Assembly (NCBI RefSeq): GCF_026571515.1 | Contig: NW_026858822.1 | Location: 124,001-188,000 of the forward strand | Source of the DNA: Ruditapes philippinarum | Lineage: Eukaryota | Direction: 5' to 3' | DNA: 64,000 bases | Shown: piece after piece, positions 2,006-29,230 of the stretch | Position numbering within the stretch: the first letter of the stretch is position 1 | How the letters are laid out: the number at the start of each line of letters is the position of its first letter | Program-made: the position numbers and the translations under genes | The notes under the pieces: generated by a model | What the model was told of the DNA's origin: nothing | The model's database searches: none | Seen by the model: the letters and a program-made list of their open reading frames with translations, nothing else

Positions 2006-2339
2006 AGACTAAAGAGATCGTTGAAAGAAATGTTGTTTTAATCTAACTACATGTATTAGGCTGTGACTAAAAAAAGGATTGGAGCACCACACTAAATACC
2101 GTATTCCGGTATATACCGGGCAAGGCGCTTGAATGATAAAATGCTAAAATCTTGTCTTTTTACCCAACGGAATGAACTTTAACAGGTCTAATTCATCTTT
2201 TTACACCGAATCAAGTACGATAATCAAGGAAAAATGTAAAATTCGGCGAAAAAAACGATATTTGTCTATTTTGTGATCATGATTTCTGCAAGCGTCTAGT
2301 GGTACTGCTCCAATCCTGTATTGAGCTAAATCCCATGTA

Positions 2340-4876: not shown

Positions 4877-4974
4877 CTTAAAGATAAGCAAAAGTTTAAA
4901 ACAAAAAGTTAAAGAGGCCTAACCTATTCAGCGAAAGAGAGTAAAAAAACAACATCAAAATCAAACAAACTGGA

Positions 4975-5283
4975 TACAGTGTCCCGTTATGTCCATCGCG
5001 ACACATACATAACTCGAAACATCGAAAACTCGAAATGACGATGGTGAAATTTAGTCGAGACCAGGATGTTGAAAAGACAAAGTTTCGATGGATGAAAGTA
5101 CGATGGAGAAAAGTCTAAATGACTATACTACGATAGTGAAAACTCGATATAATTTCATAATTTCACCATCGACCTTTCACCATCGTATTTTCGACTTTTA
5201 TCATCGTGGTTCCTTCAACATCGTAATTTCGTTGTTTCGAGTTATGTGTGTGTGTGTCTCGATGGCCCTAATGGGACACCGTA
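4975..5283. mobile_element. Non-autonomous element with TAC...GTA ends (IS3EU-like MITE)
   Basis: The left end tacagtgtcccgttatgtccatcgcgacacatacataactcgaaac matches the reverse complement of the right end (tacggtgtcccattagggccatcgagacac...ataactcgaaac). No clean TSD. Confidence 0.7.
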
Positions 5284-9468: not shown

Positions 9469-11353
9469 AAAGATTAATTTTTTATTTCTCCTAATTATGA
9501 TTTAAAAATCTGGACCAAAATGCCTTGTTTACATTGTCATTATATTAGATATTTTCGACCATGCGACCACATACATGCATCGAGGACATATTTGAAGGAA
9601 AGTGACCGTGCGACCACATACACGCATCACAAGATTCCCGTTCTCTTACGAGAAAGGAACAAAGAGTTGTCCGCCCTTTTATTAAAGGCAGACTGTAAAA
9701 ATGCCTTTGCCTTATGTTATTGATAAGGAGGCTAGTTTTCACAGATATGGCTTGAATTGGTTTATATATAACATTAGTAATGCAAAGCAAGCGGGTTTTC
9801 AGTTTACGTCTTTTTAAGTCCGCAATGAAATTTTAAAAAGATCATATATAACTTCTTGGAAAATTTTGAGTTTAAACTTTTTTCTACTTCTCATTATATG
9901 TATATAGCAGAATTATTATAATTTTGCAAAACATGAACGTTTCAAAAACGTTTTATATAAGTTAAATATTGGAGATATATTTCACACTGTTTTCACATAT
10001 TAACCTGGGGGCATTTTTGCCGATGTACTATCCAAGGACAATAACTTGAGCCTATGTTTACATAAAAATTAATAAAAGGTAAAGCAGACTGAAGCCTAAT
10101 AAATGAAACACAAAGTAAACGTCATATTTTCATGTGCCTTGATAGCGCAGTAAGCAGAGCGTCCTTGTCAGTGTTGTTTCATGCATTTAGATGCTCGTAT
10201 CATAGTTAGGTCCCATTACATTTGAGTGTTTTATGCGACGTCCTGTGAACGTTGCCTTTGCCTTGTTGATCTTTATTCTTGTTATTTTATGTATCTTTTT
10301 CTTATTTGACCACCTTTTTTCAAATAGTTTCAAATGCATGAGATAGAAAATTTTTGTACACAGGTTGATAAGCAGTTGTGCTAAGTTTGGGGAAAACGTC
10401 AAACATCAGGAAAAAGCATTATCAGAAATGTAAGAAATATAATGAAATGACGTGTATTATATATTGATAATTAATATTTCGTAATCGTAGTGTGTTTAAA
10501 ATTGATTGATTCTTAAAATGTTAAATAAGATTTTAAAAAATCACTTGAAATGTAGTTATTTTCTTAACAGTGGAACAAAAAATGAAATGAAATAAAAAAC
10601 ATAAAATAGAAATAGAAATTTATGAGAACCAAATACATGCATATTCAAATGATCATACAAAAGACAGACAAAGTAAAAAAAAAGGGAGAAAAACAACACC
10701 ACCGGCAACAACGAAGGGTTCAAACATATAAGTACAAATCATTAAAAGTTACTGTGTCGTTGATTTACCAAGTGAGCTTCTATACGACGGTATACAGTTT
10801 TTAGAATTAAACTGTATATAGTTGTTGTTAAATAATATGCAGAGTTACCCTTTATTGGAATATTCCAAGTACCGTTAAGTCACAGGACAATTAATATGGA
10901 CAATACACATTTAATTTCTATATTCGACTTATTCTACTTAAAAAAGAAAAGGTAATGTGATGGGCTGCAAGAAAAATATAGATTAAACTTGAGCAGCACG
11001 CAAATAAGACACCGGTAAGAATACATACATGTATTTGCAAGACTTTAGTCTTATCATTCCTGCTGAATTTGATCGTTACAAAAGCATGAAGTAGGCAGAA
11101 AAGTTGCGATCATGCAGTCACGCAGACCTTCATCCGTGTGACGTCAAATTCCCTATCAAAAGAGATACCTTATTTTCAGCTACATCTAGCCTTCATACCG
11201 TAATCTAACGCAAAACATACAATGCATACGTAGATACTTTATTTTTCTTTTTTTTCCTTTCTTTTTTATTCGTTTTTTTCTTCTTCAGAAAATAGCTGAA
11301 GATATACTCATGATACTAGTGATAATATTTAATACAGTGATACAATACTATCT

Positions 11354-11550
11354 TACGGAAGCCCATAAGTGCCATTTTGTCTTAGGACTTTTGTCTTATG
11401 ACTAATGACTTGTGTATTATGACTTTTGTCTTATGTATTATGACTTGACAAAAAAGCGGAAAAAGGGCAAGTTTCATCACATGCACCCTTCATGGACGTT
11501 GGAGGTAAATCTGATAGTGAAACAGAAGACGATTTGGTAAGTGTTAAATT
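11354..11550 (+). repeat. Left TIR, containing 7-bp subterminal units and a 45-nt ATG exon (11492-11536, [15 protein letters not shown]|gtaagt)
   Basis: Reverse complement of 28381-28578 with a few mismatches. Confidence 0.92.
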
Positions 11551-12679
11551 TAAAAAGTATGACAGTACTGTATTTCTCCTAACTTGAATAATTATCTCCC
11601 ATACAAGGTTAGGTTTCGAATATATGGGTCATCTCAGATGAAAAAATAGGTCACAGGGCACAACAATCGTATTAACTGTTAAAGTTTAAGTATCAAAATA
11701 TTTGCAAGACTGACACATTTTTAAAACATGTGTGAAACTTTATTCTGTATAAAATATAAATTATTTCTCCTTCAGGTAAATGCGAGTAGTAAACAATGCG
11801 AGTAGTAAACGTATTCATGCACTAGTTCAGAACATAGCAGGCCACTAAGAAGAAAAAAGACCCAGGAACATTGAAAAAGATTAACTTATGGAGATCCATT
11901 GATGGTAAACATGTTGGACATTCATCTTCTACCTGTGACTCTCTTTACAAAGGAAAATACAAGAAATTGATTTATGATTTATCAGACAAGTACAAAGGCA
12001 AATGTGCCGAATGATGATATTTTATCAAATTGCAGAGTACAGTAGGAGAACAAAAAGTAACAAAGAAGACTGCTTTGGTAAGAGTTAAATTGTTAAAAGA
12101 TTTACATAAATTAATTTTGTTTATGTCATGACAACTATAGTATATAGGATTAACTGTACAACTAGTTGCAACTTCTCCATGCATCTGTTTCAGTTTCAGT
12201 TCTTTTCCAAAACTGTAAGGCATTGGCCTAACAACTTGAAACTCTTATTCTTTTGGTGACTCTATTGAGTTATCTCCCTTTTAAACTTCTTTTTTAATTT
12301 TCAAATATAAAGGTTATTTGAGTGTTCAGTACCTGTATACGGTGCAATTTTGATTTAAGCAGTCATAGTCTTACTTATCAACCCGCCCGCTTATATCAAC
12401 AGACCGACGGTTTGTTGGCGAGGCTATGTTTTCCGTGATTGTGTATAAAATTTTCAGGCCATTTAATCAAACTCCGTCTTTGTTTAATCTTTTTTCTCCT
12501 AGCAACATTTATATGATTTAAAAAAAACAACAACAAAAACTACACACTGATAACTATGATGTTTGAATAATTATTGCAATTGACATTTTATACAGCAGTG
12601 TTTTTATAAATTATATATTTTGTCTGACATCTTATAAGTATGAATAAGAGCTTATATGTATACGTACTCTGTTTTCCAG

Positions 12680-13941
12680 ATATCACAAGTGAATATGTTG
12701 GCGTTCCATAGCTTTTGGTTTTGTCTTTGGATACAACAGGTTAACTCTGTATTAGGAGTGACACCTTCAAACATACCAGACACATCGACAGCAGGAAGTA
12801 CACGGCTTGAATTAGTGAAACACTATTTTTACTGTGGGTTTTCATATCCGGAAATTATTCTTTTGTTGTTTGTTATAAATAACATTAAAATATCGTTGCG
12901 ACAGCTTAATAGAGTACTTAAATGTAACAACTTACGACGTCGAACTGGATACACACCAGATCACATTGTTCTTGATTATATTTCCAAGGAAATTGAGACA
13001 AGTGGTCAGTGCATTGGTTATCGTTCGATGTGGAAACGCTTGACAAATGAACATAAATTAAGAGTTCCTAGAAATAAAGTTCTTTCATTTATGAAAACTA
13101 TTGATCCTGACGGAATTAATTTTCGGAAAGCCCACAGAATTAAAAGACGCAAGTACAGAATAAAGGGGCCAAATTATGTATGGCACGTAGACGGTTACGA
13201 TAAACTGAAACCATATGGCTTTTGTATACACGGTGCTATTGATGGTTACAGTAGAAGGATACTTTGGCTAGAAGTGTCACAAAGTAACAACAACCCTGCA
13301 GTCATCGCTATGTATTATCTTGAAGCGCTGAAGACGCTTCGGGTTGTTCCCCGAATTCTTCGTTGTGATAAGGGAACGGAAAATTCAACTCTGTCTTTGC
13401 TCCAACCGTTCTTCCGGTACAATGATACAGATAGTATATCGAGACTTAGAAGTTTTATATACGGAAAAACGTTTCAAATCAACGAATAGAGGCCTGGTGG
13501 GGAACTATGAGACGCCAAGGAATTCAATGGTGGATTTCCTTTTTCAAAGATTTAAAGGACAATCAAGAGTATGATGAATTAAATCCTTTACATGTTGAAT
13601 GCTTGAAATTCTCTTTTATGCACTTGATTCAGGCCGAGCTTGACAGAATAGCGGTTAATTGGAACTTACATTCCATACGTAAACAGAAATTCTGAGGTAC
13701 CAAATGGAAAACCCGATTTAATGTACTTCGTTCCGGAATTGTTTGGCGGACACAATTATGGAAAGATTGTAGATCAAAATGATGTTGTGAAATGTACGGC
13801 TTACGTAGGACAACATGCATTATAGAATTTCAAGATTTGGTAAAATTACTAAAGCCTGACATCCGCATTCCCAAGGATGTACAAGATGCTCTAGAACTAT
13901 ACAGGGAACTACTGGAACTTATTGATGAAGCCATGGAATAA
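12680..13941 (+). pseudogene. IS3EU-type DDE transposase (integrase core), frameshifted. Probable upstream exons at 11492-11536, 11776-11904 and 12036-12077
   Basis: Motifs GYRSMW, RRKYRIKGPNYVWHVDGYDKLKPYGFCIHGAIDGYSRRILWL and PRILRCDKGTEN. After a frameshift near 13470 it reads SNQRIEAWW...WNLHSIR, and after another near 13690 VPNGKPDLMYFVPE. Acceptor ttttccag at 12679 is in frame. Confidence 0.9.
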
Positions 13942-14059
13942 TTTCTCTCATATATGTGCTCTGAATAAATTCTCTTCAAGTATCAGATATTTAATATAAT
14001 TCATTAAGATCGTTTGCGGAACAAGTTCTTGCCAAGGTTTTTTTTAATCAAAACCCTAG

Positions 14060-14172
14060 AACCAACCAGTACTGGTGTCATATGAAGAAACATGGAGATG
14101 GCTCGAGTAGGACTCGAACCCATAGTCCTTAGGTTGAGGGGCAGACACATTAACCAAGAGGCCACCGCTCCT
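14060..14172 (-). mobile_element. tRNA-derived SINE fragment
   Basis: The minus strand reads ggagcggtggcctcttggttaa (A-box-like) and gggttcgagtcc (B box). Confidence 0.65.
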
Positions 14173-15204
14173 CTTTCCCCTTGTTTAAAAGAAATGGATT
14201 GTAGTACGAAACGTAATGTTGTGTAAGCTTGTTCCTCCGCAAAATGGGTTTTTATATGGAGTTAAATAAAGGAGTATGTAAAAATCATAAAGTAGAGCAA
14301 TTTATTATATCTTACAATAATTAAGTCATGCAATAAATTCAATTTTGAAAAAGAAACAAAACCAAATGCTATCAGATAGTATCAGATGTTAACTTTGAAT
14401 TGCTTTTGCGTAGTGGATTGGTAAATTCTGCGATCACACTTATGTGCCTTTGAACCAGAATCTTTTACTTATTTGAGGTCAATTCAAGGACATTAAAGTA
14501 ATACAAAGAAGAATGAAACACGAGGCTATTTGATCTGATAGCTATCTGATACAAGGGGGCTAAACTAGTTACATGCTTGTTCCCAAAATGTTGTTCTGAG
14601 ATGCCCACAATGTAACTTCCAAACATGCAGATTTTACAGGATATATGTCTTATAATATTGTTATATTGTTATATTATATAAATGTATATAATTGTCTATT
14701 ATATGATTTAAAATTCATACACAACATAAGAAGTAGTTATGTACATTAAAATAACATAAACTGATATCTATTCTGTTTCCCTTTTATAGGTTTTTCCATA
14801 GAACTTATTCAAACAACCCTTGAAACTTCACTGGTGGATATCAAAACATGAATATTTGTTACTAACACGAATCATTTTATCTTAAACTATGTCCATTTGT
14901 TTTATTTCCTTGCTTAGGTTTAAAGACTGACACTTTCAAAAAATATTGTTTTAAGGAAAAGAGCTCGCTTATATGAAATATAATCTGATAAACAAAATTA
15001 AATGGTTTTAACGAAATATATTGACAATTATTTAAGTCTTTAAGTAAAAAAATAAACAAGTGTTAACTTAAAACCAACTTTCTTTTCGGCATACAAACTT
15101 AAATATTTTGAAATCAGTCATAAGTTTTACTTAGATTTAAACAAATTGAAAATACTTATATCAAAGAAACAGAAATAATTATAGTTTTGAAAACAGCCTA
15201 ATAC

Positions 15205-16150
15205 AAAACAAGAACTATCACTAAATGTGATTAATACCCCCGCAAGACTGCTTCGGAAATGATGGAGTTATTAGTAATAGAATACCTTTTAAAAGAATTG
15301 AAATTGAGTTATGGTTGTGGGCAATTAAAGATAGTTGTGGTTCTTGTATGTTTCAGTTCCAGTCAATGTGGTTTAACATTGATGAAGTGTTATTGAATTA
15401 CCCTGTAATAAGTTCAGAAAGAGTTACGCTTCTTCAGCACTGCACTTCATCTCATTGCGCTTGACCATTGTATGAAGTTGCATTAAATTCTAAACATTAA
15501 TTTTAAGTTATGCATCGGACAAGGAAAAGGAATAAAGGGCAATAACTCTACAAATACTGAAGATGGAGTTATGGTTATTGTATACTGCACTTCCTTTCAT
15601 TGTGCTTGACCATTGTATAGAGTTGTATTGAATTCCAAACCATAGTTTTCAAGTTATGCACTGGACAAAAATTAACAAAGGGCATTGTATGAAGTTTTTT
15701 TGAATTCGAACCCGTGCTTTTAAAGTTATGCTTCGGACAAGGAAAGATATCAAAGGGCAAAAGCTCTGTAATTTGTCAAAATGGAGTTATGATTCTTGTG
15801 TACTGCACTTCCTCTTATTGTGCTTGACGATTGTATGAAATTGTATTGAATTACAACCAGTAGTTTTCAAGTTATGCTCCAGACAAGGAAAAGAAACAAA
15901 GGGCAATAACTCTGTAATTAGTCAAGATGGAGTTATGGTTCTTGAGTACTGTACTTCCTCTCAATTCGCTTGACCATTGTATGAGGTTATAAGGAATTCC
16001 AACCATGAGTCTTAAGGTTATGCTCCGGACAAGGAAAATGCAACGGACCGCTTGACCGACCGACCGACCAACCAACCAACCAACCAACCGACTGACCGAC
16101 CACCGGTTGACTCCTATATACCCCCCTAACTTCGTTTCGGGGGTATAAAA
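15205..16150 (-). mobile_element. Non-autonomous Helentron/HINE-like element with internal tandem repeats and a (CCGA/CCAA)n tract, nested in the IS3EU element
   Basis: Begins aacaag with a short hairpin. Repeats of gatggagttatggttcttgt...gaccattgtatgaag, microsatellite at 16050-16100, and an end hairpin tatacccccc...gggggtata followed by an A-run. Confidence 0.75.
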
Positions 16151-16269
16151 AGTTTTATTTAATGTAATATTAACCACTTTTGACGTCACTCTCAATATAT
16201 ATCAAACAATAATATTTCAGTTCCATTATATCACTTTTACTTATTTGCTACACCCGTTCATATCTTAGT

Positions 16270-19200
16270 TTATTTACTAAACTCTGTTGGGAATTCAGTC
16301 GCTACTGGTCTGCTATCGGGATCATAGTTCAGCCCCTTGGTTACAATGTCTACTATTCTGCTACAAATACAGTCCATTTGTACAAGTTTTGTAATGGCAT
16401 GTGGGACTTCTTTTTGACTCATAAATTCTTTAATTGTTTCAACAACTGATCTTTCATTTTCTTCTTCATCTTCCTCTTGTAATCCCCACATTGGACATTC
16501 ACTGAATAATTCTGCAAGAGTGCCTGCCATTCCCCAAACATCAGATTTTGTTGATGCAGGTCTATTACCAAGCAAAATTTCTGGTGCTTGAAAGATAAGG
16601 GTACCTGGTTGCATACCTGGTGCATAGGTGGTAGCAGAACTATTTATTGTTAACAATTTTGAAATCCCCAAGTCACATAATTTCACTACTTCTAAAGATT
16701 CTGATACAATGATGTTCTCTGGCTTTAAGTCTCGATGTAATATAATAGGAGAACTGTTGTGCAAGTAAGCAACAGCCTGTGATATCTTTTCAGCAATGTG
16801 GCACTTTTTTAGAAGGGGGATTATTTGGCATCGATCACCAAACAGTAGGTCATCTAAATTTGATCCTTTTATGTACTCAGACACAATGTGTAATGCATTA
16901 TTATATACCGAATACCCCATACACAGTATAATGTGTGGATGCCTTACTCTGCTGAGAACTTTTACTTCTCGTTCAAGAGCTTTCTGGACTAGTTTAATTC
17001 GCCTTATTTTTACAGTTTTTATTGCAACTGGAGTAAAAAGATAATGTGCCAAATGTACTGTTCCAAAAGAGCCTTCCCCAATTTTAGGTCCCATAAAAAA
17101 ACTATCATAAGGAATTTCTGGCACATTTACATCTGTTGAGAAATTAAGCGCGTGTATAGGATTATACTTGGCTGTACTTGAACGTTCTTTGAAATAGTCA
17201 CAGTTTGTCTGTTCACTCACATTCTCATTCATGACATGACTTTTTATTACTTCATTGTCTGTAATGGAATCATAACTAGGAGTTGATCGTTCAGTAACAG
17301 TAACAATATCAACTGTTTTGTCCTCCATTGATGGTTCAGTAACACTGTCAACTGTACTGTCCTCCATTGATGGTTCAGTAACACTGTCAACTGTACTGTC
17401 CTCCATTGATGGTTCAGTAACAGTGTCAACTGTTTTGTCCTCCATTGATGGTTCAGTAACAGTAGCAACTGTACTCTCCTCTATTGATGGTTCAGTAACA
17501 GTAACAGTATCAACTGTACTGTCCTCCATTGATGGTTCAGTTACATAAGCAGTATCAACTGTACTGTCATCCAGGGACTGAAGTCTTACTCGGTCAGTTA
17601 AAATCTCCTGAGTTGCATGACAAGTGTTTGTTGAAAGTTTTATTTTTTCTGCCAGCAAAGCTTGAGAGTCCACCCTTACAGCTGCACATTCATAAAGTGT
17701 ATCTTCATCTGATACCTTCACCAAGTATTCACCAGGATCAGTTACGGGGATTAAGCAAAGGTCAGGTCCACTTGCAAAGAGTTCGTTGTTTTTATACCAC
17801 TGAAAATATGCACCAGAATTATGTTCTTTATAAAGTACTCCAAGTATGATTTCCTTGTTTTCTTGCTTCTCAAAACCCACAATCTGGTCAGGTGTATGAA
17901 TTATTCCTTTTGCGTTTGATGTAGCTGTTGGATATTCAAAGTGGTTAGAACTCGGATCTGCTTGGCTCAAAATAGAGATCTTGTTGACTGTTATGCCTGT
18001 CACTTTGAAACTATTTTCCAGTGGATTATACCCATCTCTTTCTCTGTCAGGATCACTTACAATTGTGTCAAGAAAGCAGTCATCAATGGTTTGGCAGATT
18101 TTTTGTGAACATTCTGCTGTGTATGATGAGTTGCAAAGTTTAGTGTACTTTACACATATTTCACCAGGTGTTTGGTCATTTACTATCAATGATGTTAGAG
18201 GAACCGGAATGCTTTTATCATCTACATGCTGTCTAACTGGCTCTCTACCGTCAATCTCCTGTTTTTTAGATGTTCTCAAATATAAAAAGTACTGAGAGGA
18301 AAACACGCCGATAGACTTCAAGTATGTTTGCAAATTACATTCTTCCCCATTTGGCATGACAAATTTTGAGATTACTTCTCCGTTACATGTAGACAGGTTC
18401 ACTACCATATCTGTTAACTTTCCCATATCATTTTTTCCATCTGGAAAGAAAATGCTAGTTGCATAATTTATAACTGTCTGAACAGTTTGCTCTTCTTCTT
18501 TTTTAAATTCGTATATTCTTGTACCGCCTCCTCTCCGTGCGGTAACTTGTCTTAACTTCCCACGAGTTTCATGAAGCCATCCAAGGTGCAACTTATATAT
18601 GGCATGTCTACCAGTACCTCGCTGTTTCTGAAAGAAGAAATAATAAGCTATCTATGATAATTTATTGAAAATACACCAAGGGATATAGTTTTATATAGAA
18701 ATTTGATGAATCTTTCAACCATCATAACTGAATCTCATAGAAAACTTAAATGTATACGTCATTTAATAAAGCGCCCAAAAATATGTGTCACTCACATAAA
18801 AACTTGCTGTTTATTTCTTTCAAAAAAGTACATTATTTTACGCAATGGTCGTATTCATTGATTCGTTAAATTAATCTAGGTTTTGACAAAACCAAAACAC
18901 AGTTACCAGACTAAAATTTTAACCAAGTGATCTAGTATTTACCACTCATTTACCAGAACGTATTTTGACTTTTGAATTATGTCTTATGTATTTTGACTTT
19001 TGTATTATGTCTTATGTATTTTGACTTTTGTATTATGTCTTATGTATTTTGACTTTTGTATTATGTCTTATGTATTTTGACTTTTGTATTATGTCTTATG
19101 TATTTTGACTATTATATTATGTCTTATGTATTTTGACTTTTGTATTATGTCTTATGTATTTTGACTTTTGTATTTTGTATCATGACATATGTAATACGGC

Positions 19201-22200
19201 TTATGTATTGTCTATTGCGGGTTAAGAAGTATGCATCATTTGAATTATACAGATATGTAAGAAGTAAGAAGTATCGCAGCTTGCTCATCTATTACCCTAT
19301 CTCCTTAGTGATAATTTTACTTGAGAATACTAAATTTGACTGCTATTTGCATGTCGGTTCTGTGCCAAAATAATCATAAATGTTCAAACTGTTTTCTACA
19401 ACTGAATCTTAGTGCTTCGAATTATTTTGTTAATAGAATAAAAGAAGATTTTGCATGTAGGTTATTTACAGTGTTTATTTATATATTATGTAGTCAAACA
19501 TTGCACAAATGCTTTAGAAGAATGAAAAGTCAAACATTTGTTATTTGTCATTTTCAAGAAAACTTTATCGATTTGGTAGAACCATTTCATGTATCAGATC
19601 ATTCTATAAGTGATTTTACAATTCCACCTATTGATCATGTTTAGAAAAAAACAACAAAGAATTGGCTTCAAAATGTCATATTTTAAATTATGAAAAAAAT
19701 CCTTGTTTTCACCATAGATTCCTCAATATCAGATTATTAATTATCATTTATTGTACTCTTTGTATTTTCACATATTAATATACATTTATAGTAAAGTTTC
19801 ATTATATAAAACATTCAATTTGAAGAGGAAAAAAGTAATATTTTGAATGATTACATACTACAAGCTGTCTTATTTTTCATATTAATTACATATCATTGCA
19901 TGTATATATAGTGATATCAAAATACAACTGATTCAGGTACTCTCATATTTCATTCCTCCACAAAATATGATAAACAAAATCAACAAGTTAAGGCAGCGTT
20001 CAATGAACGCAAAAAAGACAATAGTGTGAAACTTCTTATTTATTTATATTTGAATAAGTTATGCTGAATTAATGCAATTGAATCAACCATTTCACTTAAC
20101 TTGATTTTTATATTAATTAGAATTATATGGCACATAAACCGACAAGCACGTAAACTGACAGAAGAACAAAGTTGTACATGCACAAAGTATCATAGTAGAT
20201 GACTTTAAGCATTAAAGATGCATGCCTCCAGATGAGTCAAAATATTTTTTTTAAAAACTCAAACTTAAGATAAATATGCTAAGATTTTAAGAAAAGTAAA
20301 GAGATTCAAGAATTAAGTTATAATTTACATGTTGGGATAAATCACTGGTTTTGCAGTATGCATCACCATAATTCTCCTAACGCGTAACGAAAGGGCTATA
20401 TTTGCCAATTTAACCACCTTTAAAAATTTACGATTGTAAGTAGATTATTACTTTGTTCATAACAATATTTTCCTTTTCATAATATTCATGAGAATTTTCA
20501 TGAATGTTTGAAGTATGCTGCTTTAAAAGTTAAAGAGTTATTCAAATCCTTAATTATTATATATTAAATCATGACTCAGATATAGATGTACATATATGAA
20601 GACTGTTTTTCCTAAACTAAAATGATTATTTTTGTTGCAAGTTTAAGGCATGGGGCATGTTCTTCACACTTCTTTAGGAGGACCCAGCAACTACCAAAGC
20701 AAAATTTTTTTGGTAAAATAGATAAATACAGAATTCCTAAAGAAAGCCCAACACGGCAAAATTGAAAATGTTGCAGGCTCGGTTTGATTGAGCCTGTTCA
20801 TGGACGGTACTGGAAAGTGCAAGTTACCGTCCACGCCCCCTAGCACCGGCTTAAGCAGAATTCAACATTTAAACATGAAATAGTAAAATTTTGAATTTAG
20901 AAACATCCGCAGATGTGTTCATACGGCGGTTATCATGGAACCTTCAATGTGACACTTCCGTGCCATTCCATGAAAAGCGGCGTATGGTCCCCAAGTAATA
21001 AAAAGCGTGTGCCCTAAACGAGAAAACAATGTGCGGAACTAAATAAAATGGAATTTTGAAAGGGGATCAGAGGTTATGAAGCCTACATATCACAGATAAG
21101 ACGTCAAAAGACAAATTTAAAACATCATTATTCAGTATCTAGGGATTTGTACTTATAAATCATAAACCTGTTTCTTGAAAAAATACTTGTATTTTCCATT
21201 GTAAACAGAGTAACGTAACAGACTGAATGTCTCATTTTTACCTTTTTTGGATTTTCCATCATAAGCTGTTTCTTCTTCTTTTTTTGCCCTGCTATATTTT
21301 TAACTAGCTCCTTAATTCGTTTTCTTCTCACATTTTTCCTGTAGGAGAAATAATATATATTTCATACAGAATATTGCAAGAATCAAGTTTCACAACTGTA
21401 TCAAAATGTGTCTGTCTTGCAAGAATCTTGTTACTTAATTAATCTAACAAATAATATTCATTCATAAATCAGATGACCAATAATGGAATAAGACCTAGAA
21501 AACCAATCAAAACAATTTTCCTGGCCAATCTTCATAAAATTTGCGGTGAAAATGTAAATTCTAGAGAGTTAAGATTTATAGCGCACTGTAAACTACTTTT
21601 TCTCACGAAATGAAATGGTCCATATAAGGACTCGTCCGAGAAATATTTGGGACAAACATCCTGACCGTGTTCAACAGAGGCAAATGAGTGACCATCGGTG
21701 TATTAATGTGGATGGACATTCATAAAACCTTACTAAGCCACTGTTTGACGGATGTGTTCTAAAAAAAAAGAACCTGATATTAAGACAACTTTGCAATTAG
21801 AATCGAGGTGAAAAGTAAAACTATAAAAGAGCAAGATGGTTTTAAAATGTACGTCAGTGTTGGTATACTTTTCTGGCCCTTCGTGATCATTGATGCCAGC
21901 AGTATTAAGTGTGGATAATTGAGTACCGCTCAAGACGGTGCAAGGGGGCGTGAGGGATGTTGCACTTATTCATTATCCCTCATGAACAGACTCAATCAAA
22001 CTGAGTCTGCAATTTTCGCGTAATTTTGTTGTGATTAATGCTTCAGGGGGATCACTTTGTTTCCATTTTATTCTTTTCAGTGATACACATGCCAGTGAAG
22101 AGCTTGGAAGTTGAATTTCTTTTATTAACAAAACAATATTTTGAAATTTGGAATAATTTTTTCCTTTTTGTAAATATTTACAAAGGTACTTTGTGTTTAT

Positions 22201-25200
22201 CTTTCCATAAATCTTCTTCAAATGTTATGTTTCTCAAAATCAAAACTGACATTCCTCGCTTTTGTTATCCAATTCAGTTCTAGAGAACAATAATCCTGCT
22301 GGTCAGTTTTTTTTAATTGATTTTGTTATTGTAACTGCTTTAAAAACACTCATTAAAGGCAGTTTTAAATTAAAGTGTAGTATTCTTATAAGTACTCCAT
22401 TATAACATTTATACATGTCTCATATCAATTGTTATTAGCCTTTGACACAGAAAGTGTTACTTCGATATGATTTTGAAATAGATATTGTTATTTTATTCTT
22501 GATAAATTATCAGTAATAATTCCTTGAATCATTTAGTGGTCTCCTGAATAAACTTGTTACACATGAATAGATTATTCCAAGTGTTGGACCTATCAGTTCA
22601 TACCGGGTCAACATTGCATCATTTTATATCTCACCTTACAGTTAATTAGCCAGCAACTTGAAAGATGTAGATAAAAGTGATTTATATTTTCCCAGTTGTT
22701 CGCATAGTTTCTATACAGACCATAGTACAGAACAAAATATACAAACTGAATTAAAGATAAAACTCTAGAAATTTAAATTATGAATTTATAGATATTTTTG
22801 AAATTTTATGTGCTGTAAAAAATTCATTGAGTGAAATATGATCAGACCTATAAATATTCTTTAATGTTATTGCTGATTCTCAAAATACACATCACCTTAC
22901 AACACATTACGTGTTATATTATGCTAACTGGCTTTAATGACGCTGTATCTGCCAAGTGGGATTAAGGTCTTAGACCCATCATTGACATATCTTAGAACCT
23001 ATGGAATGTTAATATTTATTGAATCTATGCTACATGCCTGACATGTTTGCAAATTTTCATTGACTTTTACCATCTAATAAGAAAATTATGACCAAATGTA
23101 TGTTTTCGGCCTTTCCCTTTCTGGATCGTGTAAAATTTGCCAGAGTTGAACTATAGAAATGAGCTTATTTTCAACAGATATTGCAAAAACATTAGAAATT
23201 TGGTACCAAATTGTAGTACATTTATTATTTTATCAAAATAAAATATCATTTGAGTAACAGTATTTGCAATAAAACTTATGAAAACAAAAATATGTTACCA
23301 TTGTCACTCGGAAAATGGCCAAATCGTGAAAATGTAGACTTGTACTTCAATTTTTCTAAGAATTTTCTATAACCTACTTACAAGGTCCAGCCAATTGAAA
23401 TACATAGAAATTATCTAACATACCATATGAGAAAAATAAGAAAAGAAAGACATCATTTACCATGTTGTTTGTAAAATATACAGCATTATATTTGACAACC
23501 CCATAAACTGATTTTGGCCATTTTTCATCAACAGTACACATTTCTTTATGTAAAATTCAAAATACATTTTGAAAAGTATCAAACATTCTCAAAATGACCT
23601 AATTATCATGAAGCTATATTCTAAGCATTCTATAAATATGTTAATTACTGTATATACTGAGTAAATGTAAAAATTGTCAACTTGAAATGGATCTCAACGT
23701 ATTGTTCTGACTTTAGAAAGAGCACGAGCAGTGTACTAAACTGTATTATTCCCAAAGTATCCCCTCTGGAGCAACACAGAAGTATATCATATAAAAATGC
23801 TATGTCATACACTAATTCCTTGAAAAATACTGTGCAAGGGCAGGGATAACAGTTTCTAATGTTCTTTTAGTATTAGTTACTCGTGGCTGACCGTCACAGT
23901 TCTTCATCACGAAAATGTTCCGAAGACCATCTTCGCCTTGGCGCTTAAAGATGCACCTTAGATGTTGTAGGTTCAAGCCGGACGCAGCAATATTCTCGGC
24001 TGTAGTTAACTTACACACACTATTATAAATCAATACTCTAAGTGACGGCAAATTCTTTGCTTTTTCCCGACTGCACAACTGGGAATTGTACACAGATTTT
24101 GTTGAAAATGTGTGTGGCAGCAGATCAACAGATAATATGTCCAAGTGGTGAATAAGTTTACCAAGAATCGAGACATCTTCTGAAGCATTATGAGCACAGT
24201 ATGAAGCTCCCAATAGATCCTTTGCAAGGTCTTCCTGTTTGTAAGACTTCCTGTTTGGGTATGCTTTTCTAAATATAGACAGTGAATCCGCACATCCAGC
24301 AACACACTTTACACATTCTGTCCCTCAATCCTACATTGTCACATGCCGTCAACAAAACAGGAAAGTCAAATCTTCTGCCATTATGCGCAACCAATACAAC
24401 ATTCTGAAATTTTTCTAACCAATCACAATATGATTTCAAAGCTTCATATATGGAATAAGCCTCTACATTAGTTCCATTGTACTGCATCTTGTGATCCACC
24501 ATTCTTAGGCCGGTCACTTCTTGTGCCTTGTCAGATATGGGCAATGTAGGTAGAACATACATATTGAAAGCTTTCCCACTTTTAGGTTCTGTGGCAGCAA
24601 CCTGGGTAATATGTGGGATCTGGCCATCGTGTACTGAAACAAACAACACAATTATTTATAAATAAATAAACAATTTTGAGCTGTTTTATGTGCTCTTATA
24701 AATAATCTGAGATCTTATTCTAATTCAGCTTGTTCCGAATAAGGATAAACCATTCCTGATATATTGCATATTTTTTTACAATTATATTTTAAGAGACGAC
24801 TAATCACTCAACCTAATATCGAAGGACGATAACCTAAAATGAAAGCAACTGTGTTACAGTTTTCACATGATATATATCAACAAATTCGCAATACAGGTCT
24901 ACTTACTAAGGCCAGTTGTCTCCAGGTCAAAAGCAATGTATGTAGGCTGTCCTGTTGGCAGCACTATAGGTTTGAAGTCACCTCGAGGGACTGGATCTGG
25001 CAGCTTTTGGATGTCAGCATCATCTGAATGCCCAATCTCTGAAATACAAATATATAGATTAGAATATAACCTATAAAAGTAAACAAAAGGTAATTTGCAA
25101 ACTTTGTTTTAGTAATGTTTATATTTACAAGAAATGATGTTCGAAGAAGGAAAAGAAGAAGGAAAACACCAGTACCTGCAAGACTGACAGTATTTTGTCA

Positions 25201-28200
25201 AAATACATGTATATGAGCCGTGTCATGACAAAACCAACATAATGGGTTTGCAACCAGCATGGATCCAGACCAGCCCATGCTGTTCGCTATCAGTTTCTCT
25301 ACTTGTAATAGAGTTGGAAAGCAAACAGCATGGATCCTGATCAGACTGCATGGATGTGCAGGCTGATCTGGATCCATGCTGGTCGCAAACCCATTATGTT
25401 GGTTTTGTCGTGACACGGCTCATATGTTTGTTCTGTAAGTAAAAAAAACAACAGCACAAATCACTTTACCTACCTGACTGATAGGACATGCCTTCAAGAG
25501 CTTCTTGAGCACCTTGTGTTATTGACCGCTCTTGTTTTAGTTGAAGTCGCCGCCGCTTAGTCGATGGCAGTGCCGATCTTTCCTGGACACGCTTCCTATG
25601 CTTCTGGCATTTATCTGCATATCTGAGGCTGTGGACACCAGGGGAAAGACCTGCCTCGGAGTGTACCTGAAAGCAGTAATCAGATTATTTAGCACACTTT
25701 AAAATGAAATATTCAGTCAAACATGGATATTGTAAGAAAAGAATTTTCTTGATCTATATATAAACCCAGGCAAAAATAATTCAGATAAAATGGGAACTAT
25801 TCATAACTCTTTACTATTGTTGAGGAAAACTGCATTATGATTTTTGTAAAAGTAACACCATTATTCAATAAAGTTTGCTTTTCACACCAACAATTTATAC
25901 ATTCCATCAAGGTGCATAGTGGTCTATAAGCAATATTTTTCTTCATTATCACTCAACATTTTCAACAGCAATTGCTTATATCTTTATATAAAAGTCATCT
26001 TGTGGATTGTTTGTCTCATAAAACTGACTGGCATACAGGTCCTATCTGCACAAAGCATAACAGAAAATTTAATGACAATCTTTCCAAAGTTCTAGATAAT
26101 AGAGTATTTACCTTATGATCATCACCTGTCAACATCTTGTTCCTTGAATAATAACAGTGCTGAACTGGAACAGCTGAACAAAAACAACAAACTTCAATAA
26201 ACAATTAACATCAATCAACCGTCAAACAAACATTCCAACATTATTTTGGCAATACATCCAACTAAATACACTTCCATGAAAATTATTTTTTTTTTTTTCA
26301 AAGGCTTCAACAATCTGAAAGAGACTGTTTTCTCTTTCTCAAATATAAATCAATGCTTATTACTTTATGAATGTTCTTTATTTTTCGAGTGATGGTTGAA
26401 GTTTGCCAAAATTATGCATGAAAAATTCACAAATATATGTAATACTGAAAACAATTAATACCAAGGAAACAGGGTCTCCAGAACTAGTATACCACAAATG
26501 AAAGGTTGTTATGACTTTCTTAATTGTTGTTCAAAACTATGTCTGTACTGGTCTAACATTTGTAAATAAAATAACAAGCAAACTAAACAGAACAAACTTA
26601 AACAGTAACAAGATATGTACCTTTGAAATGTAGTGACGCCCTTCATTGATGAATGCTGCTGTGGCCTTCACTCTAAAATCCAAAGATTCTGAATTCCCAT
26701 AATGAAGGGACTTTGGAGCCCTCATGGTGACCTCTCTGTTGGCGTGCTCGCACTGCTGACTCGAACCTAGGTCTGCGAGCTGGGGAGCCTTCATCACAAC
26801 TGGTTCAAACAGTTTTTCTAGCTGAGATCTAAGGTGGTCGTCCTTAAGCGGTCCTTTGTAGGGCAGGCTTCTGTGTGAGTATTTAACACTGCGGTCACGC
26901 TTGTACCCACACCATCGAGGCTGGCACATTGTGTGGTCTGCGAATTGATGAGGTACTAAAGCTTTCAGATTTTCTTCTAGTCCCTTTGGATCACCTTGAT
27001 TCTTTGCTAGAATATACTTCACACATTTCTGAATGTGTAAGATCACTAACTTACTGAGCTTTGTGCTTTTGTCCGCCTGAAGAGCATATAGCTTCTTTCC
27101 AATGTTTTTCACTATATGATTTCTGTCAAATTTCTTTTTCAAGCTAATGTTTGATTTGGATTTCAGACGAGCTATCATGGTGTTATCTCCATCGCCTTCA
27201 ATCACTTCCACAGGGGTTCCGTCCTTGTGTAGCTCACATACACCCCGCTCACCCGATACACTTTCCATAAGCCTGGCACTTCCTGTGTGATCATGAACAC
27301 AACGATGATTTCGTACTGCCTCTGAAGGTCTATAAGACCACAGAATTTGCAACACTTTAAACCAGAAAGAAGAACATCAAACTCAACGATTCTACGACCT
27401 GTCTTCCAGCCCATCCTTGACACATTTTTAGGCAATTTCGGCTGGCATTCACAGTCTTGTCCATTACACAAATGTGCTCCAACATAATTGTGATCTTCTA
27501 TAACATTCGACTGCTTCTTTAATCGCCGAGAATTCACAACTTTCTTGTAACGGCCTGTTTTATCGCGGACTTTCATTTTGACATTTACGGTGAAGGACGT
27601 TTCATGTAATCTCTAAACAAAGTGGTGGATTTCAAACATCCGATAATTTCAACGAATTGTTGGGAATTTGGATATTATATTGTTAATATACCAAACAAAT
27701 AGCAGTTATTTAATTTTTGTTTACAATACTTTTTACGAAAACGCAATTTGTAACGTTTATATTTTTTAGAGAATAACTAAGCCGACCTAAGCCGAGTAAT
27801 CCCGAAGTACCTCCGTATCCGTTACGAGGAAGGGCGGAGTTAGGCGAAATTTCACGATCTAATGATGGGTCTAAGACCTTAAGCCGTCAATTGTATCATA
27901 ATCCATGCTTTTTTAGGGGAAATGAACCTTATTCCACTTTTACACTCATGAATGAAGTTTATCTATCTTTCAAATTTGATTTCTATGACAGGCATTATGT
28001 CTGTCTGCTAACATAAAGAAACAGGTGGCCATAGTAAATCATGATGTTTGCAAACCTCAAAGCAGTAAAATCACTTATTAATTAATCTTGGATATTTTTA
28101 TTTATTTCCTTACTATTTCAACTCAAAGAAAGTCAAAATATATTGTTCAAGTGATTGCACAGGTTAATGAACAAATATGGTGAGATAACACTGTGAGGAG

Positions 28201-28439
28201 TGCTTTGCATTAACACCTGTTGTCTAAATTTTGTACTCTTGATGAAATCTTTGTAGTTTTAACTGATACATGAATCGGAGCAAGTATGTGCTATACATAA
28301 ATAGCATAAATAGTGTTCGCTATAAACAAACAATAATACATTGAGAAATAAGCTTGTATAAGGGAGCCTAACTGTTTTCAATTTCAACACTTACCAAATT
28401 GTCTTCTGTTTCACTATCAGATTTACCTCCGTCAGCCAT
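16270..28439 (-). CDS. Transposon-borne Ser/Thr (TKL-like) protein kinase. Predicted exons 28439-28395, 21338-21242 and 18627-16270
   Basis: The 2358-nt last exon is open and has GEGSFG, VAIK, the alphaC Glu, [19 protein letters not shown] and the subdomain XI Arg. Acceptor tttcag at 18628 extends the ORF ([19 protein letters not shown]). Exon 2 is 97 nt, one base too long to keep frame with exon 1, but has in-frame ATGs at 21262 and 21259. Confidence 0.85.
17290..17575 (-). repeat. Coding 39-bp (13-aa) tandem repeat [13 protein letters not shown], about 6-7 copies
   Basis: tccattgatggttcagtaac recurs in frame within the kinase ORF. Confidence 0.95.
18961..19190 (+). repeat. 28-bp tandem array (tattttgacttttgtattatgtcttatg), about 7-8 copies
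   Basis: Direct periodicity. Built from the same 7-bp words as the TIR subterminal region. Confidence 0.9.
20216..20522. mobile_element. Kolobok-like MITE (TTAA TSD, AG..CT ends); same family as 51388-51738
   Basis: ttaa|agatgcatgcctccaga ... gtatgctgct|ttaa. The interior aligns by eye with the copy at 51388. Confidence 0.75.
23812..27576 (-). pseudogene. Kolobok-type DDE transposase fused to a DEDDh (DnaQ/PML-like) 3'-5' exonuclease. Exons 27576-26621, 25666-25474, 25038-24907 and 24633-23812
   Basis: Transposase motifs GRRIVE..CxxC, [15 protein letters not shown], [24 protein letters not shown] and GLSPG..KRRR..EGMSYQS. These splice in phase to FDLETTGL (ExoI), [14 protein letters not shown] (ExoII) and AHNASEDV (ExoIII). 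Frameshifts lie near 27335 and 24305. Confidence 0.87.
25215..25421. mobile_element. Palindromic MITE with GAG..CTC ends and 4-bp TSD ATAT (Sola-like), internally deleted copy
   Basis: atat|gagccgtgtcatgacaaaaccaacat ... gtgacacggctc|atat, located in an intron of the Kolobok gene. Confidence 0.88.
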
Positions 28440-28578
28440 AATGGGCGCATGTGATGAAACTTGCCTTTTTGCCGCCTTTTTTGTCAAGTCATAATACATA
28501 AGACAAAAGTCATAATACATAAGTTATTAGTCATAAGACAAAAGTCCTAAGACAAAATGGCACTTATGGGCTTCCGTA
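28381..28578 (-). repeat. Right TIR, containing a 45-nt ATG exon (28439-28395, [15 protein letters not shown]|gtaagt)
   Basis: Reverse complement of 11354-11550. Confidence 0.92.
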
Positions 28579-29108
28579 CTATCTAGATCTGTCATAAGCT
28601 TTATCTATATCTATTCTCTTCCTACGCAGTGACCCCGTTGATCAGTAAAATCTGCAAAGGGAGGTAATCACTGTGAGGAGTTTGAAGATATCTGGAATTT
28701 TATCGTGACAAAATATGGTAATTGATTTAAATCTACTATAACCTCTTGTCTGCAGGAATATATAGGTTTGCAGACCTTTTGGAGTCTCTTCGAGTAGATA
28801 ATGAAGACGAAAAAAAAGATATAAACTTTACTCAATATAGATTCATTATAAGACTTAGTCATTTGTAAAACGGAAATATTTGGTCTGCTACTACTATTTG
28901 TGACTATTTATTTTGTGTTTGAAGGTTAGTAAGATACTTTGATAATTAATCTAAACACTATTCAAATCGTTCCGAACTTTTGGTGTTATACATATGAAAT
29001 TTGACAAGGCTTTTCATTACATGTAAGCGCCATTGCCTATTAATGTTTATTTCTTAAACTGTCTATTGTCAACATGACAGACAAAGAACAGAAACAAGAT
29101 AACGTACC

Positions 29109-29230
29109 AACCTGAAACATTCCACGCAATTAAAATTATGAAAACTGCAACAATTCCAAAACATAAAAGCTTGGGCACTGTCTTCATGTAGTAAGTATAG
29201 TGAAAAAAGTGCATAATTCTTCTCTTGAAG
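29109..29230 (-). CDS. Possible first coding exon of a type II membrane protein (signal anchor), perhaps a sulfotransferase paralog
   Basis: MFQMPKLFKRRIMHFFHYTYYMKTVPKLLCFGIVAVFIILIAWNVS has a basic N-terminus and a hydrophobic stretch, followed by candidate GT donors. No clean downstream join was found. Confidence 0.35.

What the first reader, a model, noticed from the sequence alone, without database searches (positions are those of the whole stretch)
11354..28578. Large IS3EU-type transposon carrying a protein kinase gene as cargo
Seen: ~200-bp TIRs and an exact 6-bp TSD (CTATCT) enclose a + strand integrase-core transposase and a convergent - strand gene. That gene has an N-terminal GWLH..RQV..RRGGGTR segment, an Ig-like segment ([18 protein letters not shown]), an acidic Ser/Thr-rich 13-aa repeat and a kinase with every catalytic motif. 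Subtracting the recognisable nested elements leaves roughly 11 kb. Established: IS3EU elements have TAY..RTA ends and 6-bp TSDs. Inference: the kinase is a built-in part of the element rather than a host gene caught between two ends, since its first exon lies inside the TIR. A self-mobile kinase could modulate host signalling or silencing. I do not recall a kinase-bearing IS3EU family but cannot confirm novelty.
Basis: partly seen in the sequence, partly recalled or inferred. Interest (0 to 1): 0.9.

Follow-up and report, generated by a model that had tools for sequence, protein, structure and literature searches.

The report
Clam IS3EU transposon with built-in kinase
This is a worn copy of a multi-copy IS3EU-type DNA transposon of the Manila clam whose own second gene ends in a protein kinase. 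The kinase is a long-standing part of this transposon lineage across animal phyla, not a host gene picked up recently.

Summary
Terminal inverted repeats (TIRs) of about 200 bp (11354-11556 and 28375-28578) end in TACGG..CCGTA and are flanked by an exact CTATCT duplication. They enclose an rva_4/rve DDE transposase gene (+) and a convergent gene (-) that ends in a Ser/Thr kinase.

The genome is Ruditapes philippinarum. The family is multi-copy: at least 40 TIR hits, and six full copies, five of them with different perfect 6-bp duplications. All six full copies carry the kinase and transposase regions, mostly decayed.

The kinase is not recent cargo. It is the C-terminal domain of the element's conserved second protein. 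That protein has a basic helix, a ubiquitin-like domain, a middle domain, an Ig-like domain, an acidic repeat linker and the kinase. Kinase-less IS3EU lineages in the same genome share the front part. Front-plus-kinase proteins also occur in other bivalves, an acorn worm and a sea anemone, and their kinases form one clade with catalytic residues kept.

The window copy is defective. Its transposase loses frame before the catalytic E, exon 2 of the kinase gene has a +1 frameshift, and two elements are nested inside.

Published work already says IS3EU elements encode two proteins, with a convergent alpha-kinase in fungi. I therefore file this as a new member of a known kind. This scan also noted the same architecture on another piece of this genome. 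No RNA evidence could be obtained.

The parts
11348..11353 (.). Left target-site duplication, CTATCT
   Evidence: It is identical to 28579-28584.
11354..11556 (+). Left TIR, starting TACGGAAGCCC, with 14-nt subterminal repeats (TTTTGTCTTATGAC-like)
   Evidence: It is conserved in all six full copies.
11492..11536 (+). Putative first exon inside the left TIR: ATG, 45 nt ([15 protein letters not shown]), then a GTAAGT donor. It is presumed to belong to the transposase gene.
   Evidence: This is a sequence-level inference only; there is no RNA evidence. The RefSeq model of the transposase (P0311) starts differently.
11777..11870 (+). Relic of an inverted copy of exon 2 (KRIHALVQNIAG-like). It has stops in all three frames and a 16-bp duplication in all six copies.
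   Evidence: (I13, I23)
12656..13931 (+). Transposase gene (HTH_21 plus rva_4/rve DDE core). In this copy the frame is lost near 13489, before the catalytic E. An intact 424-aa ORF exists in copy C8985 (L038:3728-5002:-). The end coordinate is extrapolated from the length of that ORF.
15683..16105 (.). 146-bp tandem repeat and a (GACC)n run between the two gene ends
16270..18627 (-). Exon 3 of the second gene (ORF2): 785 codons, open, including the stop codon
16294..17088 (-). Ser/Thr protein kinase domain (Pkinase). All catalytic residues are present, with DLG in place of DFG.
17298..17573 (-). Acidic Ser/Thr-rich 13-aa repeat linker (39-nt period, 6.8 copies)
17662..17910 (-). Ig-like domain
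17923..18195 (-). Middle alpha/beta domain with no matched fold
   Evidence: This part was barely tested by the fold search.
18259..18609 (-). Ubiquitin-like (beta-grasp) domain preceded by the GWLH...GGGTR hairpin
   Evidence: Z 7.3 to kindlin F0, Z 6.7 to Ddi2 and USP11 UBL domains; these Z values are middling
18960..19178 (.). Internal array of 28-bp repeats resembling the TIR subterminal repeats. It lies in intron 2 of ORF2.
   Evidence: (I4-I12). It is present in all copies with variable length.
20719..21117 (.). An insertion of about 400 bp found only in the window copy
21242..21338 (-). Exon 2 of ORF2 (basic helix, [23 protein letters not shown]...). It is 97 nt here, a +1 frameshift, against 96 nt and in frame in copies C12346 and C11450.
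   Evidence: Homologous N-terminal segments occur in annotated proteins of other species.
22966..27878 (-). Nested, unrelated DNA transposon in intron 1. It has a TTAA duplication and GGTCTTAGACCC TIRs. It encodes a Mutator-like transposase and a PML_C/Exu-type exonuclease.
28395..28439 (-). Putative exon 1 of ORF2 inside the right TIR ([15 protein letters not shown], then a GTAAGT donor)
28375..28578 (-). Right TIR
28579..28584 (.). Right target-site duplication, CTATCT

Best explanation
The stretch is one decayed copy of a young, multi-copy IS3EU/GingerRoot-type cut-and-paste DNA transposon of the Manila clam.

The intact element is about 12.5 kb and carries two convergent genes. Each apparently starts from a near-identical short first exon, with its upstream promoter, inside a TIR. 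This layout resembles maize MuDR.
- Gene 1 is the DDE transposase (HTH plus rva_4/rve core).
- Gene 2 (ORF2, about 830 aa over three exons) encodes, in order: a basic N-terminal helix that looks like a nuclear-localisation signal; a ubiquitin-like domain; a middle domain; an Ig-like domain; a fast-evolving acidic Ser/Thr-rich repeat linker; and a catalytically complete Ser/Thr kinase.

The front part of ORF2 is the ancestral accessory protein of this transposon group. The kinase is an old fusion to it, inherited along the transposon lineage and kept under purifying selection while lineages were active.

Inferred, not shown: the front domains bind a partner, either the transposase or a host factor. 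The kinase then phosphorylates that partner, the linker, or both, to license or regulate transposition in the nucleus.

The window copy cannot move by itself. Its transposase is truncated before the catalytic E, ORF2 exon 2 is frameshifted, and two elements are nested inside. Its open kinase exon is most simply luck in a young copy.
For: Mobility and family:
- TIRs and duplication.
- At least 40 TIR hits scored out of 128 candidates.
- Six full copies, five with perfect and different 6-bp duplications.
- Copies are 94-98% identical along the whole length.

The kinase is part of the element:
- Kinase and transposase hits sit between the TIRs on 12 contigs.

ORF2 is ancestral to the group:
- Its front 300 aa is 29-34% identical to ORF2 of four other IS3EU lineages in this genome. 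Three have no kinase in the ORF read and one has a kinase. Three of the four lie convergent to an rva_4 transposase.
- A profile search found 397 proteins at E<=1e-10.
- 26 of the 32 aligned sequences (the window protein plus 31 homologues) carry Pkinase.
- Named homologues come from Mactra, Mya, Saccostrea, Saccoglossus and Actinia.

Single kinase clade and conservation:
- The ORF2 kinases form one clade, support 100/99.
- Catalytic K, E, D, N, D and E are kept in 25-27 of 27 sequences.
- The nearest kinases outside the family are only 25-35% identical.

Copies decay neutrally:
- Nonsynonymous to synonymous changes run at about 2-3 to 1 in four of the five other copies, and 88:8 in the indel-riddled C8985. 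Frameshifts are frequent.

Gene model:
- Exon phases fit.
- Exon-1-like and exon-2-like N-termini occur in annotated homologues, including a RefSeq model of a sister lineage in the same species.

Folds: (pLDDT 89.9).

IS3EU features in the literature:
- 6-bp duplication and TAYGG..CCRTA ends (PMC10045372, PMC12730594).
- Two proteins per element (PMC8232023, PMC10853768).
- A convergent alpha-kinase in fungal families (PMC12730594).
Against: - The TIR promoters, the first exon and the splicing are therefore inferred.
- The RefSeq transposase model (P0311) does not start with the TIR exon.
- The left copy of exon 2 is dead in all copies, so the two genes are not fully symmetrical.
- The test for binding between the transposase and the ORF2 front part gave no verdict.
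- No full copy read so far has both genes intact, so current activity is unproven.
- No empty site was found.
- The kinase clade was tested against only 18 outgroup kinases, chosen by a word-based search.
Confidence: 0.8

Rival explanations
1. Recent gene capture: a host kinase gene or exon was picked up by this clam family as passenger DNA, as in Pack-MULE or GingerRoot gene-fragment capture. On this view it has no role for the element.
For: GingerRoot elements are known to carry host gene fragments (PMC6839031). The kinase-less ORF2 lineages in this genome show that the kinase is dispensable for some lineages.
Against: - The kinase lies in the same open exon as the conserved front part.
- The same fusion occurs in other bivalves, a hemichordate and a cnidarian.
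- The kinases form one clade with catalytic residues conserved.
- No host kinase above about 35% identity was found.
Confidence: 0.05
2. Domesticated gene: the open kinase exon in the window marks a host-co-opted copy, now a cellular kinase gene that happens to sit in a dead transposon.
For: Among the copies examined, only the window copy keeps the 785-codon exon fully open, while its transposase is broken.
Against: - Exon 2 of this copy carries a +1 frameshift.
- Intron 1 holds a 4.9-kb nested transposon.
- Copy C11450 differs by a single frameshift only, so one open copy among 12 or more young copies is expected by chance.
- No RefSeq protein of this family's ORF2 surfaced in the searches.
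Confidence: 0.05
3. ORF2 acts against the host rather than on transposition chemistry. Its ubiquitin-like and Ig front part docks on a host silencing or DNA-damage factor, and the enzyme tail (a kinase, or a HECT ligase in sister lineages) inactivates it. This would be an anti-silencing function, like the TET/JBP genes of fungal transposons.
For: - Fungal IS3EU and other transposons carry TET/JBP genes that are read as anti-silencing devices (PMC12730594).
- A note from this scan (s1-813815) reports sister lineages with HECT in place of the kinase.
- HECT matches lie convergent to IS3EU transposase hits within about 10 kb on contigs C5854 and C9387.
- Swapping one protein-modifying enzyme for another on a constant docking module fits a targeting role.
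Against: No target is known and there is no experimental data.
Confidence: 0.3

Closest known systems
[quoted passage not shown]
   Same: 6-bp target duplication, TA..TA (TAYGG..CCRTA) termini, TIRs of 100 bp or more, an rve-like DDE transposase without an HHCC finger, and two encoded proteins.
   Different: The searchable literature does not describe the second protein of animal elements. Here it is a ubiquitin-like / Ig-like / Ser-Thr-kinase fusion. I could not check whether the Repbase entries record this.
Fungal TET+ IS3EU families with an alpha-kinase gene (Kojima 2025, PMC12730594)
   Same: A kinase gene convergent with the transposase inside an IS3EU element.
   Different: The fungal gene is called an alpha-kinase, an atypical kinase. 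The clam gene is a classical protein kinase (Pfam PF00069). No Alpha_kinase family was reported for ORF2 or its front part, and no TET/JBP gene is present.
Maize MuDR (mudrA / mudrB).
   Same: Two convergent genes, each transcribed inward from a promoter in a roughly 200-bp TIR, with a transposase plus an accessory protein.
   Different: A different superfamily (Mutator, 9-bp duplication). MURB has no kinase. Here even a short coding first exon appears to be duplicated in the TIRs.
Styx / REP9 of Zymoseptoria (PMC8232023, PMC10853768) and Kapitonov's 'Intons' (PMC3520738)
   Same: IS3EU-derived elements that have gained extra conserved genes.
   Different: Those are fungal, encode four to six proteins, and no kinase fusion of this type is reported for them.

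Membership tests
IS3EU/GingerRoot DNA transposons | 6-bp target-site duplication | tested here: met
   Five of six full copies have perfect, different 6-bp duplications. The sixth has AAAATA plus 6 extra bases.
IS3EU/GingerRoot DNA transposons | Termini TA..TA, typically TAYGG..CCRTA, with long TIRs | tested here: met
   TACGG...CCGTA ends and TIRs of about 200 bp. The criterion comes from PMC10045372 and PMC12730594.
IS3EU/GingerRoot DNA transposons | DDD/E transposase of the IS3/integrase (rve) type without an N-terminal HHCC zinc finger | tested here: met
   rva_4 E 8.5e-37, rve E 4e-5 and HTH_21 E 2e-4 on the intact copy. The HVDGYD, RCDKGTEN and NQRIE motifs are present. Pfam reported no zinc-finger family.
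IS3EU/GingerRoot DNA transposons | Transposase clusters with Repbase IS3EU / GingerRoot transposases in a phylogeny | not testable with these tools
Homologues occur in taxa where IS3EU or GingerRoot is reported, namely corals and acorn worms.
IS3EU/GingerRoot DNA transposons | Encodes two proteins | tested here: met
   A transposase plus a convergent ORF2 in six copies, and in three of the four other lineages aligned. The criterion comes from PMC8232023.
Eukaryotic protein kinase superfamily (Pfam PF00069) | Glycine loop, VAIK lysine, alpha-C glutamate, HRD aspartate with asparagine, DFG aspartate, APE | tested here: met
   [22 protein letters not shown] and APE are present. They are conserved in 25-27 of 27 family members. 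Enzyme activity itself was not tested.
Alpha-kinase second gene of fungal IS3EU | Alpha_kinase domain (PF02816) | tested here: not met
   Pfam scans of ORF2 (E up to 0.01) and of its front part (E up to 1) report no Alpha_kinase family. Only Pkinase and PK_Tyr_Ser-Thr are found. The fold search gives ubiquitin-like and Ig folds for the front part.
Ubiquitin-like (beta-grasp) fold, ORF2 residues 7-123 | Structural match to UBL domains | tested here: inconclusive
   VIA Z 7.3 (kindlin F0) and Z 6.7 (Ddi2 and USP11 UBL domains) on a model with pLDDT 89.9. Z below 8 may reflect only a common arrangement, and Foldseek found nothing.

The most novel reading that the evidence does not exclude
The IS3EU superfamily as a whole depends on a self-encoded protein-modifying enzyme. 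A conserved ubiquitin-like/Ig docking module is fused to a classical kinase in animals, to a HECT ligase in some clam lineages, and is functionally paralleled by an alpha-kinase in fungi. The two genes are driven from duplicated promoter-plus-first-exon units in the TIRs. That would make it the first cut-and-paste transposon group shown to control its own activity, or its host's response, through post-translational signalling. No searchable paper has analysed this.
Probability: 0.3. Interest if true: 0.65.

Novelty: new member of a known kind. Interest (0 to 1): 0.42.

Why it matters
IS3EU is a poorly studied superfamily. [quoted passage not shown]

This work gives a worked anatomy of an animal IS3EU element. 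It shows that the second gene is a conserved, modular protein made of a docking front part and an enzyme tail, and that it is widespread across cnidarians, molluscs and hemichordates.

That turns a vague 'second ORF' into a testable idea: a transposon-encoded kinase that regulates transposition or host defence.

It also has a practical side. Genome annotators are labelling these transposon genes as host proteins, for example 'Rik1-associated factor 1', 'KINX-like' and 'Bud32'. This inflates kinome counts in bivalves.

Tried and rejected
No other route was tried.
- The first word-based search with the ORF2 front part found nothing. The exhaustive profile search then found 1694 relatives.
- ESM Atlas gave no usable hit.
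- Foldseek against the PDB returned only weak Ig-type rows.
- Complex prediction on the transposase (residues 29-424 of the C8985 copy) with the ORF2 front part scored 0.27, below the 0.34 mark. This is no verdict and counts neither for nor against binding.
- Empty-site search for the window copy: both flanks belong to another repeat family (76-97% identical copies elsewhere). The best paralogue, C13687, has about 370 nt between the two flank matches instead of the ~134 nt expected for a plain empty site.
- Empty-site search for copy C12346: the flanks are unique, with no second haplotype contig. Absence of an empty site in this assembly is therefore uninformative.
- TIRs of the more distant lineages (C12824, C10152 and others) could not be delimited in the fetched pieces. 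The sister lineage's first exon was not inside the fetched 9.9 kb.
- The spliced ORF2 model was never joined into one sequence for any search. Exons were handled separately and only their lengths and phases were compared.
- I rejected the idea that the left-arm exon-2 copy is a coding exon of the transposase, because it has stops in all frames in all six copies.
Full report
**Observation**

The inverted-repeat search finds arms 11354-11456 / 28476-28578 (103 nt, 98%) that continue into 11450-11556 / 28375-28481 (107 nt, 87%). The ends read TACGGAAGCCC...GGGCTTCCGTA. CTATCT lies immediately outside both ends.

Between the ends are two genes:
- A + strand ORF (12656-13489) that hits Pfam rva_4 (integrase core, E 1.6e-19), rve and HTH_21.
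- A - strand ORF (16270-18591) that hits Pkinase (E 5e-45).

The 13-aa repeat is a 39-nt period with 6.8 copies at 17298-17573.

**Which genome, and is the element mobile?**

The assembly is 1.4 Gb in 15,874 contigs. RefSeq proteins of Ruditapes philippinarum lie on contigs whose lengths equal those of C10152, C15112 and C8985. The genome is therefore the Manila clam.

The 207-bp end of the element matches at least 40 places at 91-100% identity, with 128 candidates in the first look.

Six copies have both ends: the window copy, C12346, C11450, C955, C8985 and C4027. Five of them are flanked by perfect and different 6-bp duplications: CTATCT, ATCTTT, AAAATG, GGTTTA and CCTCAT. The sixth has AAAATA with six extra bases.

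The copies align with the window copy over their whole length at 94-98% identity. This is a real, fairly young transposon family of about 12.3-13.7 kb.

The window copy is longer (17.2 kb) for two reasons:
- A private insertion of about 400 bp at 20719-21117.
- A nested 4.9-kb transposon at 22966-27878. This element has a TTAA duplication and GGTCTTAGACCC inverted ends. It encodes a Mutator-like transposase and a PML_C/Exu-type exonuclease.

**Is the kinase part of the element?**

Yes. Translated searches of the genome place close relatives of the kinase ORF (79-100% identity) and of the transposase together on 12 contigs. Where the ends are assembled, both lie between the family's TIRs in the same convergent order.

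All six full copies contain the kinase region.

**What is the second gene?**

*The front part is shared with other lineages.* The first 300 or so residues of the long exon are 29-34% identical to ORFs on C12824, C7464, C15112/C10152 and C4023. The first three lie convergent to more distant rva_4 transposases (49-57% identical); no transposase was seen beside the C4023 ORF in the piece read. The C7464, C15112 and C4023 ORFs stop after this front part. The C12824 ORF continues through a long repeat region into a kinase. The front part is therefore the common accessory protein of these IS3EU lineages, and the kinase is an added C-terminal domain in some of them.

*The fusion is widespread.* A profile of the five front parts, searched against 1.84 billion representative proteins, finds 1694 relatives, 397 of them at E<=1e-10. 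Of the 32 aligned sequences (the window protein plus 31 long homologues), 26 carry Pkinase. Named front-plus-kinase examples are:
- Mactra antiquata KAL4238672.1, annotated 'Rik1-associated factor 1'.
- Mya arenaria WAR09570.1, annotated 'KINX-like'.
- Saccostrea cucullata XP_062593625.1.
- Saccoglossus kowalevskii XP_002738342.1.
- Actinia tenebrosa XP_031565478.1.

*The kinases share one origin as far as tested.* In a maximum-likelihood tree the ORF2 kinases form one clade (support 100/99) against 18 other kinases. The window protein sits next to the Mactra protein at 42% identity. The outgroup was small and picked by a word-based search.

*The kinase looks active.* The catalytic lysine, the alpha-C glutamate, the HxD aspartate, the asparagine, the D[L/M]G aspartate and the APE glutamate are kept in 25-27 of 27 distinct family members.
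- Outside the family, the best database kinases are only 25-35% identical.
- The best solved relatives are CTR1 and B-Raf, at E about 1e-27.

This is the pattern of an old fusion maintained by selection, not of a recent capture.

*Individual copies decay.* Within the clam family, nonsynonymous to synonymous differences run at about 2-3 to 1 in four of the five other copies, and 88:8 in the indel-riddled C8985. Frameshifts are common. This is what dead transposon copies look like, not a host gene.

**Structure of the front part**

With a 60-sequence alignment the AlphaFold model reaches pLDDT 89.9. VIA-align against the PDB gives:
- Ubiquitin-like beta-grasp domains for residues 7-123 (kindlin F0 Z 7.3; Ddi2 and USP11 UBL Z 6.7).
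- Ig domains for residues 240-322 (myomesin Z 6.8).

These Z values are middling, so the folds are likely but the assignments are not proof of relationship. Residues 145-235 remain unmatched. Foldseek alone found nothing significant. No alpha-kinase-like match appeared, either by sequence or by fold.

**Gene models**

Both TIRs contain an ATG followed by 45 nt of open frame and a GTAAGT donor. The left one encodes [15 protein letters not shown] and the right one [15 protein letters not shown]. Both are conserved in all six copies, with fixed left/right differences.

On the ORF2 side the model has three exons:
- Exon 1, in the right TIR: 28395-28439.
- Exon 2: 21242-21338, preceded by a good acceptor and followed by a GT donor. 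It encodes [32 protein letters not shown].
- Exon 3: begins at 18627, after an acceptor.

The phases are 45 nt + 96 nt + 2358 nt. Exon 2 is 96 nt and open in copies C12346 and C11450. The other four, including the window (97 nt), have 1-2-nt indels in A-runs of exon 2. I compared exon lengths and phases only and never joined the exons for a search.

There is independent support. Annotated homologues begin with an acidic stretch followed by the same (R/K)Ixx(L/V)(I/V)xxI...KK helix. These include Mya, Mactra, Actinia and a RefSeq model of the C10152 sister lineage in the same clam.

On the transposase side the picture is less clean:
- The inverted copy of exon 2 (from 11777) has stops in every frame in all copies.
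- The RefSeq transposase model (P0311, 417 aa, identical to the C8985 copy) starts MISQVN..., not with the TIR exon.

I could get no RNA data. TIR-initiated transcription is therefore an inference.

**State of the window copy**

- The transposase reads through HVDGYD and RCDKGTEN but leaves the frame at about 13489, before the NQRIE glutamate that the intact C8985 copy has.
- ORF2 exon 2 has a +1 frameshift.
- Intron 1 carries the nested transposon.
- The 785-codon kinase exon is open, but copy C11450 is only one frameshift away from that. I read the open exon as chance, not domestication.

**Comparison with what is known**

IS3EU/GingerRoot elements are defined by 6-bp duplications, TA..TA (TAYGG..CCRTA) ends and an rve-like transposase without HHCC (PMC10045372, PMC12730594, PMC6839031). 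All features testable here are met.

- The superfamily is described as encoding two proteins (PMC8232023, PMC10853768).
- Kojima (2025) states that fungal TET+ IS3EU families have an alpha-kinase gene convergent with the transposase (PMC12730594, section 4.1).
- The GingerRoot paper does not mention a kinase.
- One paper notes that IS3EU structure and function are largely unexplored (PMC11934779).

A kinase-bearing IS3EU is therefore not new in principle. What I found no description of is the animal version: a classical kinase fused to a ubiquitin-like/Ig module and spread over three phyla. I could not consult Repbase, whose acorn-worm and Hydra entries may well list it.

Another follow-up in this scan (s1-813815), on a different piece of this genome, reached the same architecture and added HECT-ligase variants. 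I could check that only by coordinates. HECT matches lie convergent to IS3EU transposase hits within about 10 kb on C5854 and C9387.

**How it probably works**

Shown:
- A mobile two-gene IS3EU element.
- ORF2 as a conserved modular protein with an intact-looking kinase.

Inferred:
- Inward transcription from both TIRs.
- Nuclear import through the basic helix.
- Docking through the ubiquitin-like and Ig modules.
- Phosphorylation of the transposase, of the acidic Ser/Thr linker, or of a host factor.

I put about 0.8 on the structural reading. On function, I put roughly 0.45 on 'regulates the transposition machinery' and 0.3 on 'acts on host silencing or damage signalling'. A structure-based binding test between the transposase and the front part gave no verdict.

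**Verdict**

Novelty is modest: a new member of a known, under-described kind. Interest is moderate.

Noticed in passing
window 22966-27878 (TTAA at 22962-22965 and 27879-27882): A nested DNA transposon with a TTAA duplication and GGTCTTAGACCCATCATT inverted ends. It encodes a Mutator-like transposase (PF20700) followed by an Exu/PML_C-type exonuclease. It is absent from the other five copies of the host element.
   Followed up: partly
window 10754-11353 and 28579-29178: Both flanks of the IS3EU copy belong to another repeat family with dozens of copies at 75-97% identity elsewhere. The element therefore inserted into an older repeat, and paralogues have about 300 extra bases at the insertion point.
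   Followed up: partly
window 18960-19178: A 28-bp tandem array (7.8 copies, 96% matches) resembles the TIR subterminal repeats. It sits in intron 2 just upstream of the kinase-gene exon 3. It is present in all copies with variable length and could be an internal cluster of transposase-binding sites.
   Followed up: no
G000 C5854:48802-49071 with 58007-58603, and C9387:275747-276373 with 286625-286843: HECT-domain matches lie convergent to IS3EU transposase matches about 10 kb away. This fits another note of this scan that some lineages carry HECT instead of a kinase.
   Followed up: partly
Copies C955, C8985 and C4027 (L035-L040): The kinase exon in these copies carries many 1-2-nt insertions clustered in stretches. 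This looks more like uncorrected long-read assembly error than ordinary decay, so counts of 'broken' copies may be inflated.
   Followed up: no
Public annotations: ORF2-kinase transposon genes are annotated as host proteins under unrelated names: 'Rik1-associated factor 1' in Mactra, 'KINX-like' in Mya, and 'Bud32' in a JGI record.
   Followed up: no
L041 (C12824) 2071-5298: A sister-lineage ORF2 has about 550 aa of short tandem peptide repeats between the Ig-like domain and the kinase, against about 90 aa in the window family. The linker is a fast-evolving, repeat-prone region.
   Followed up: no
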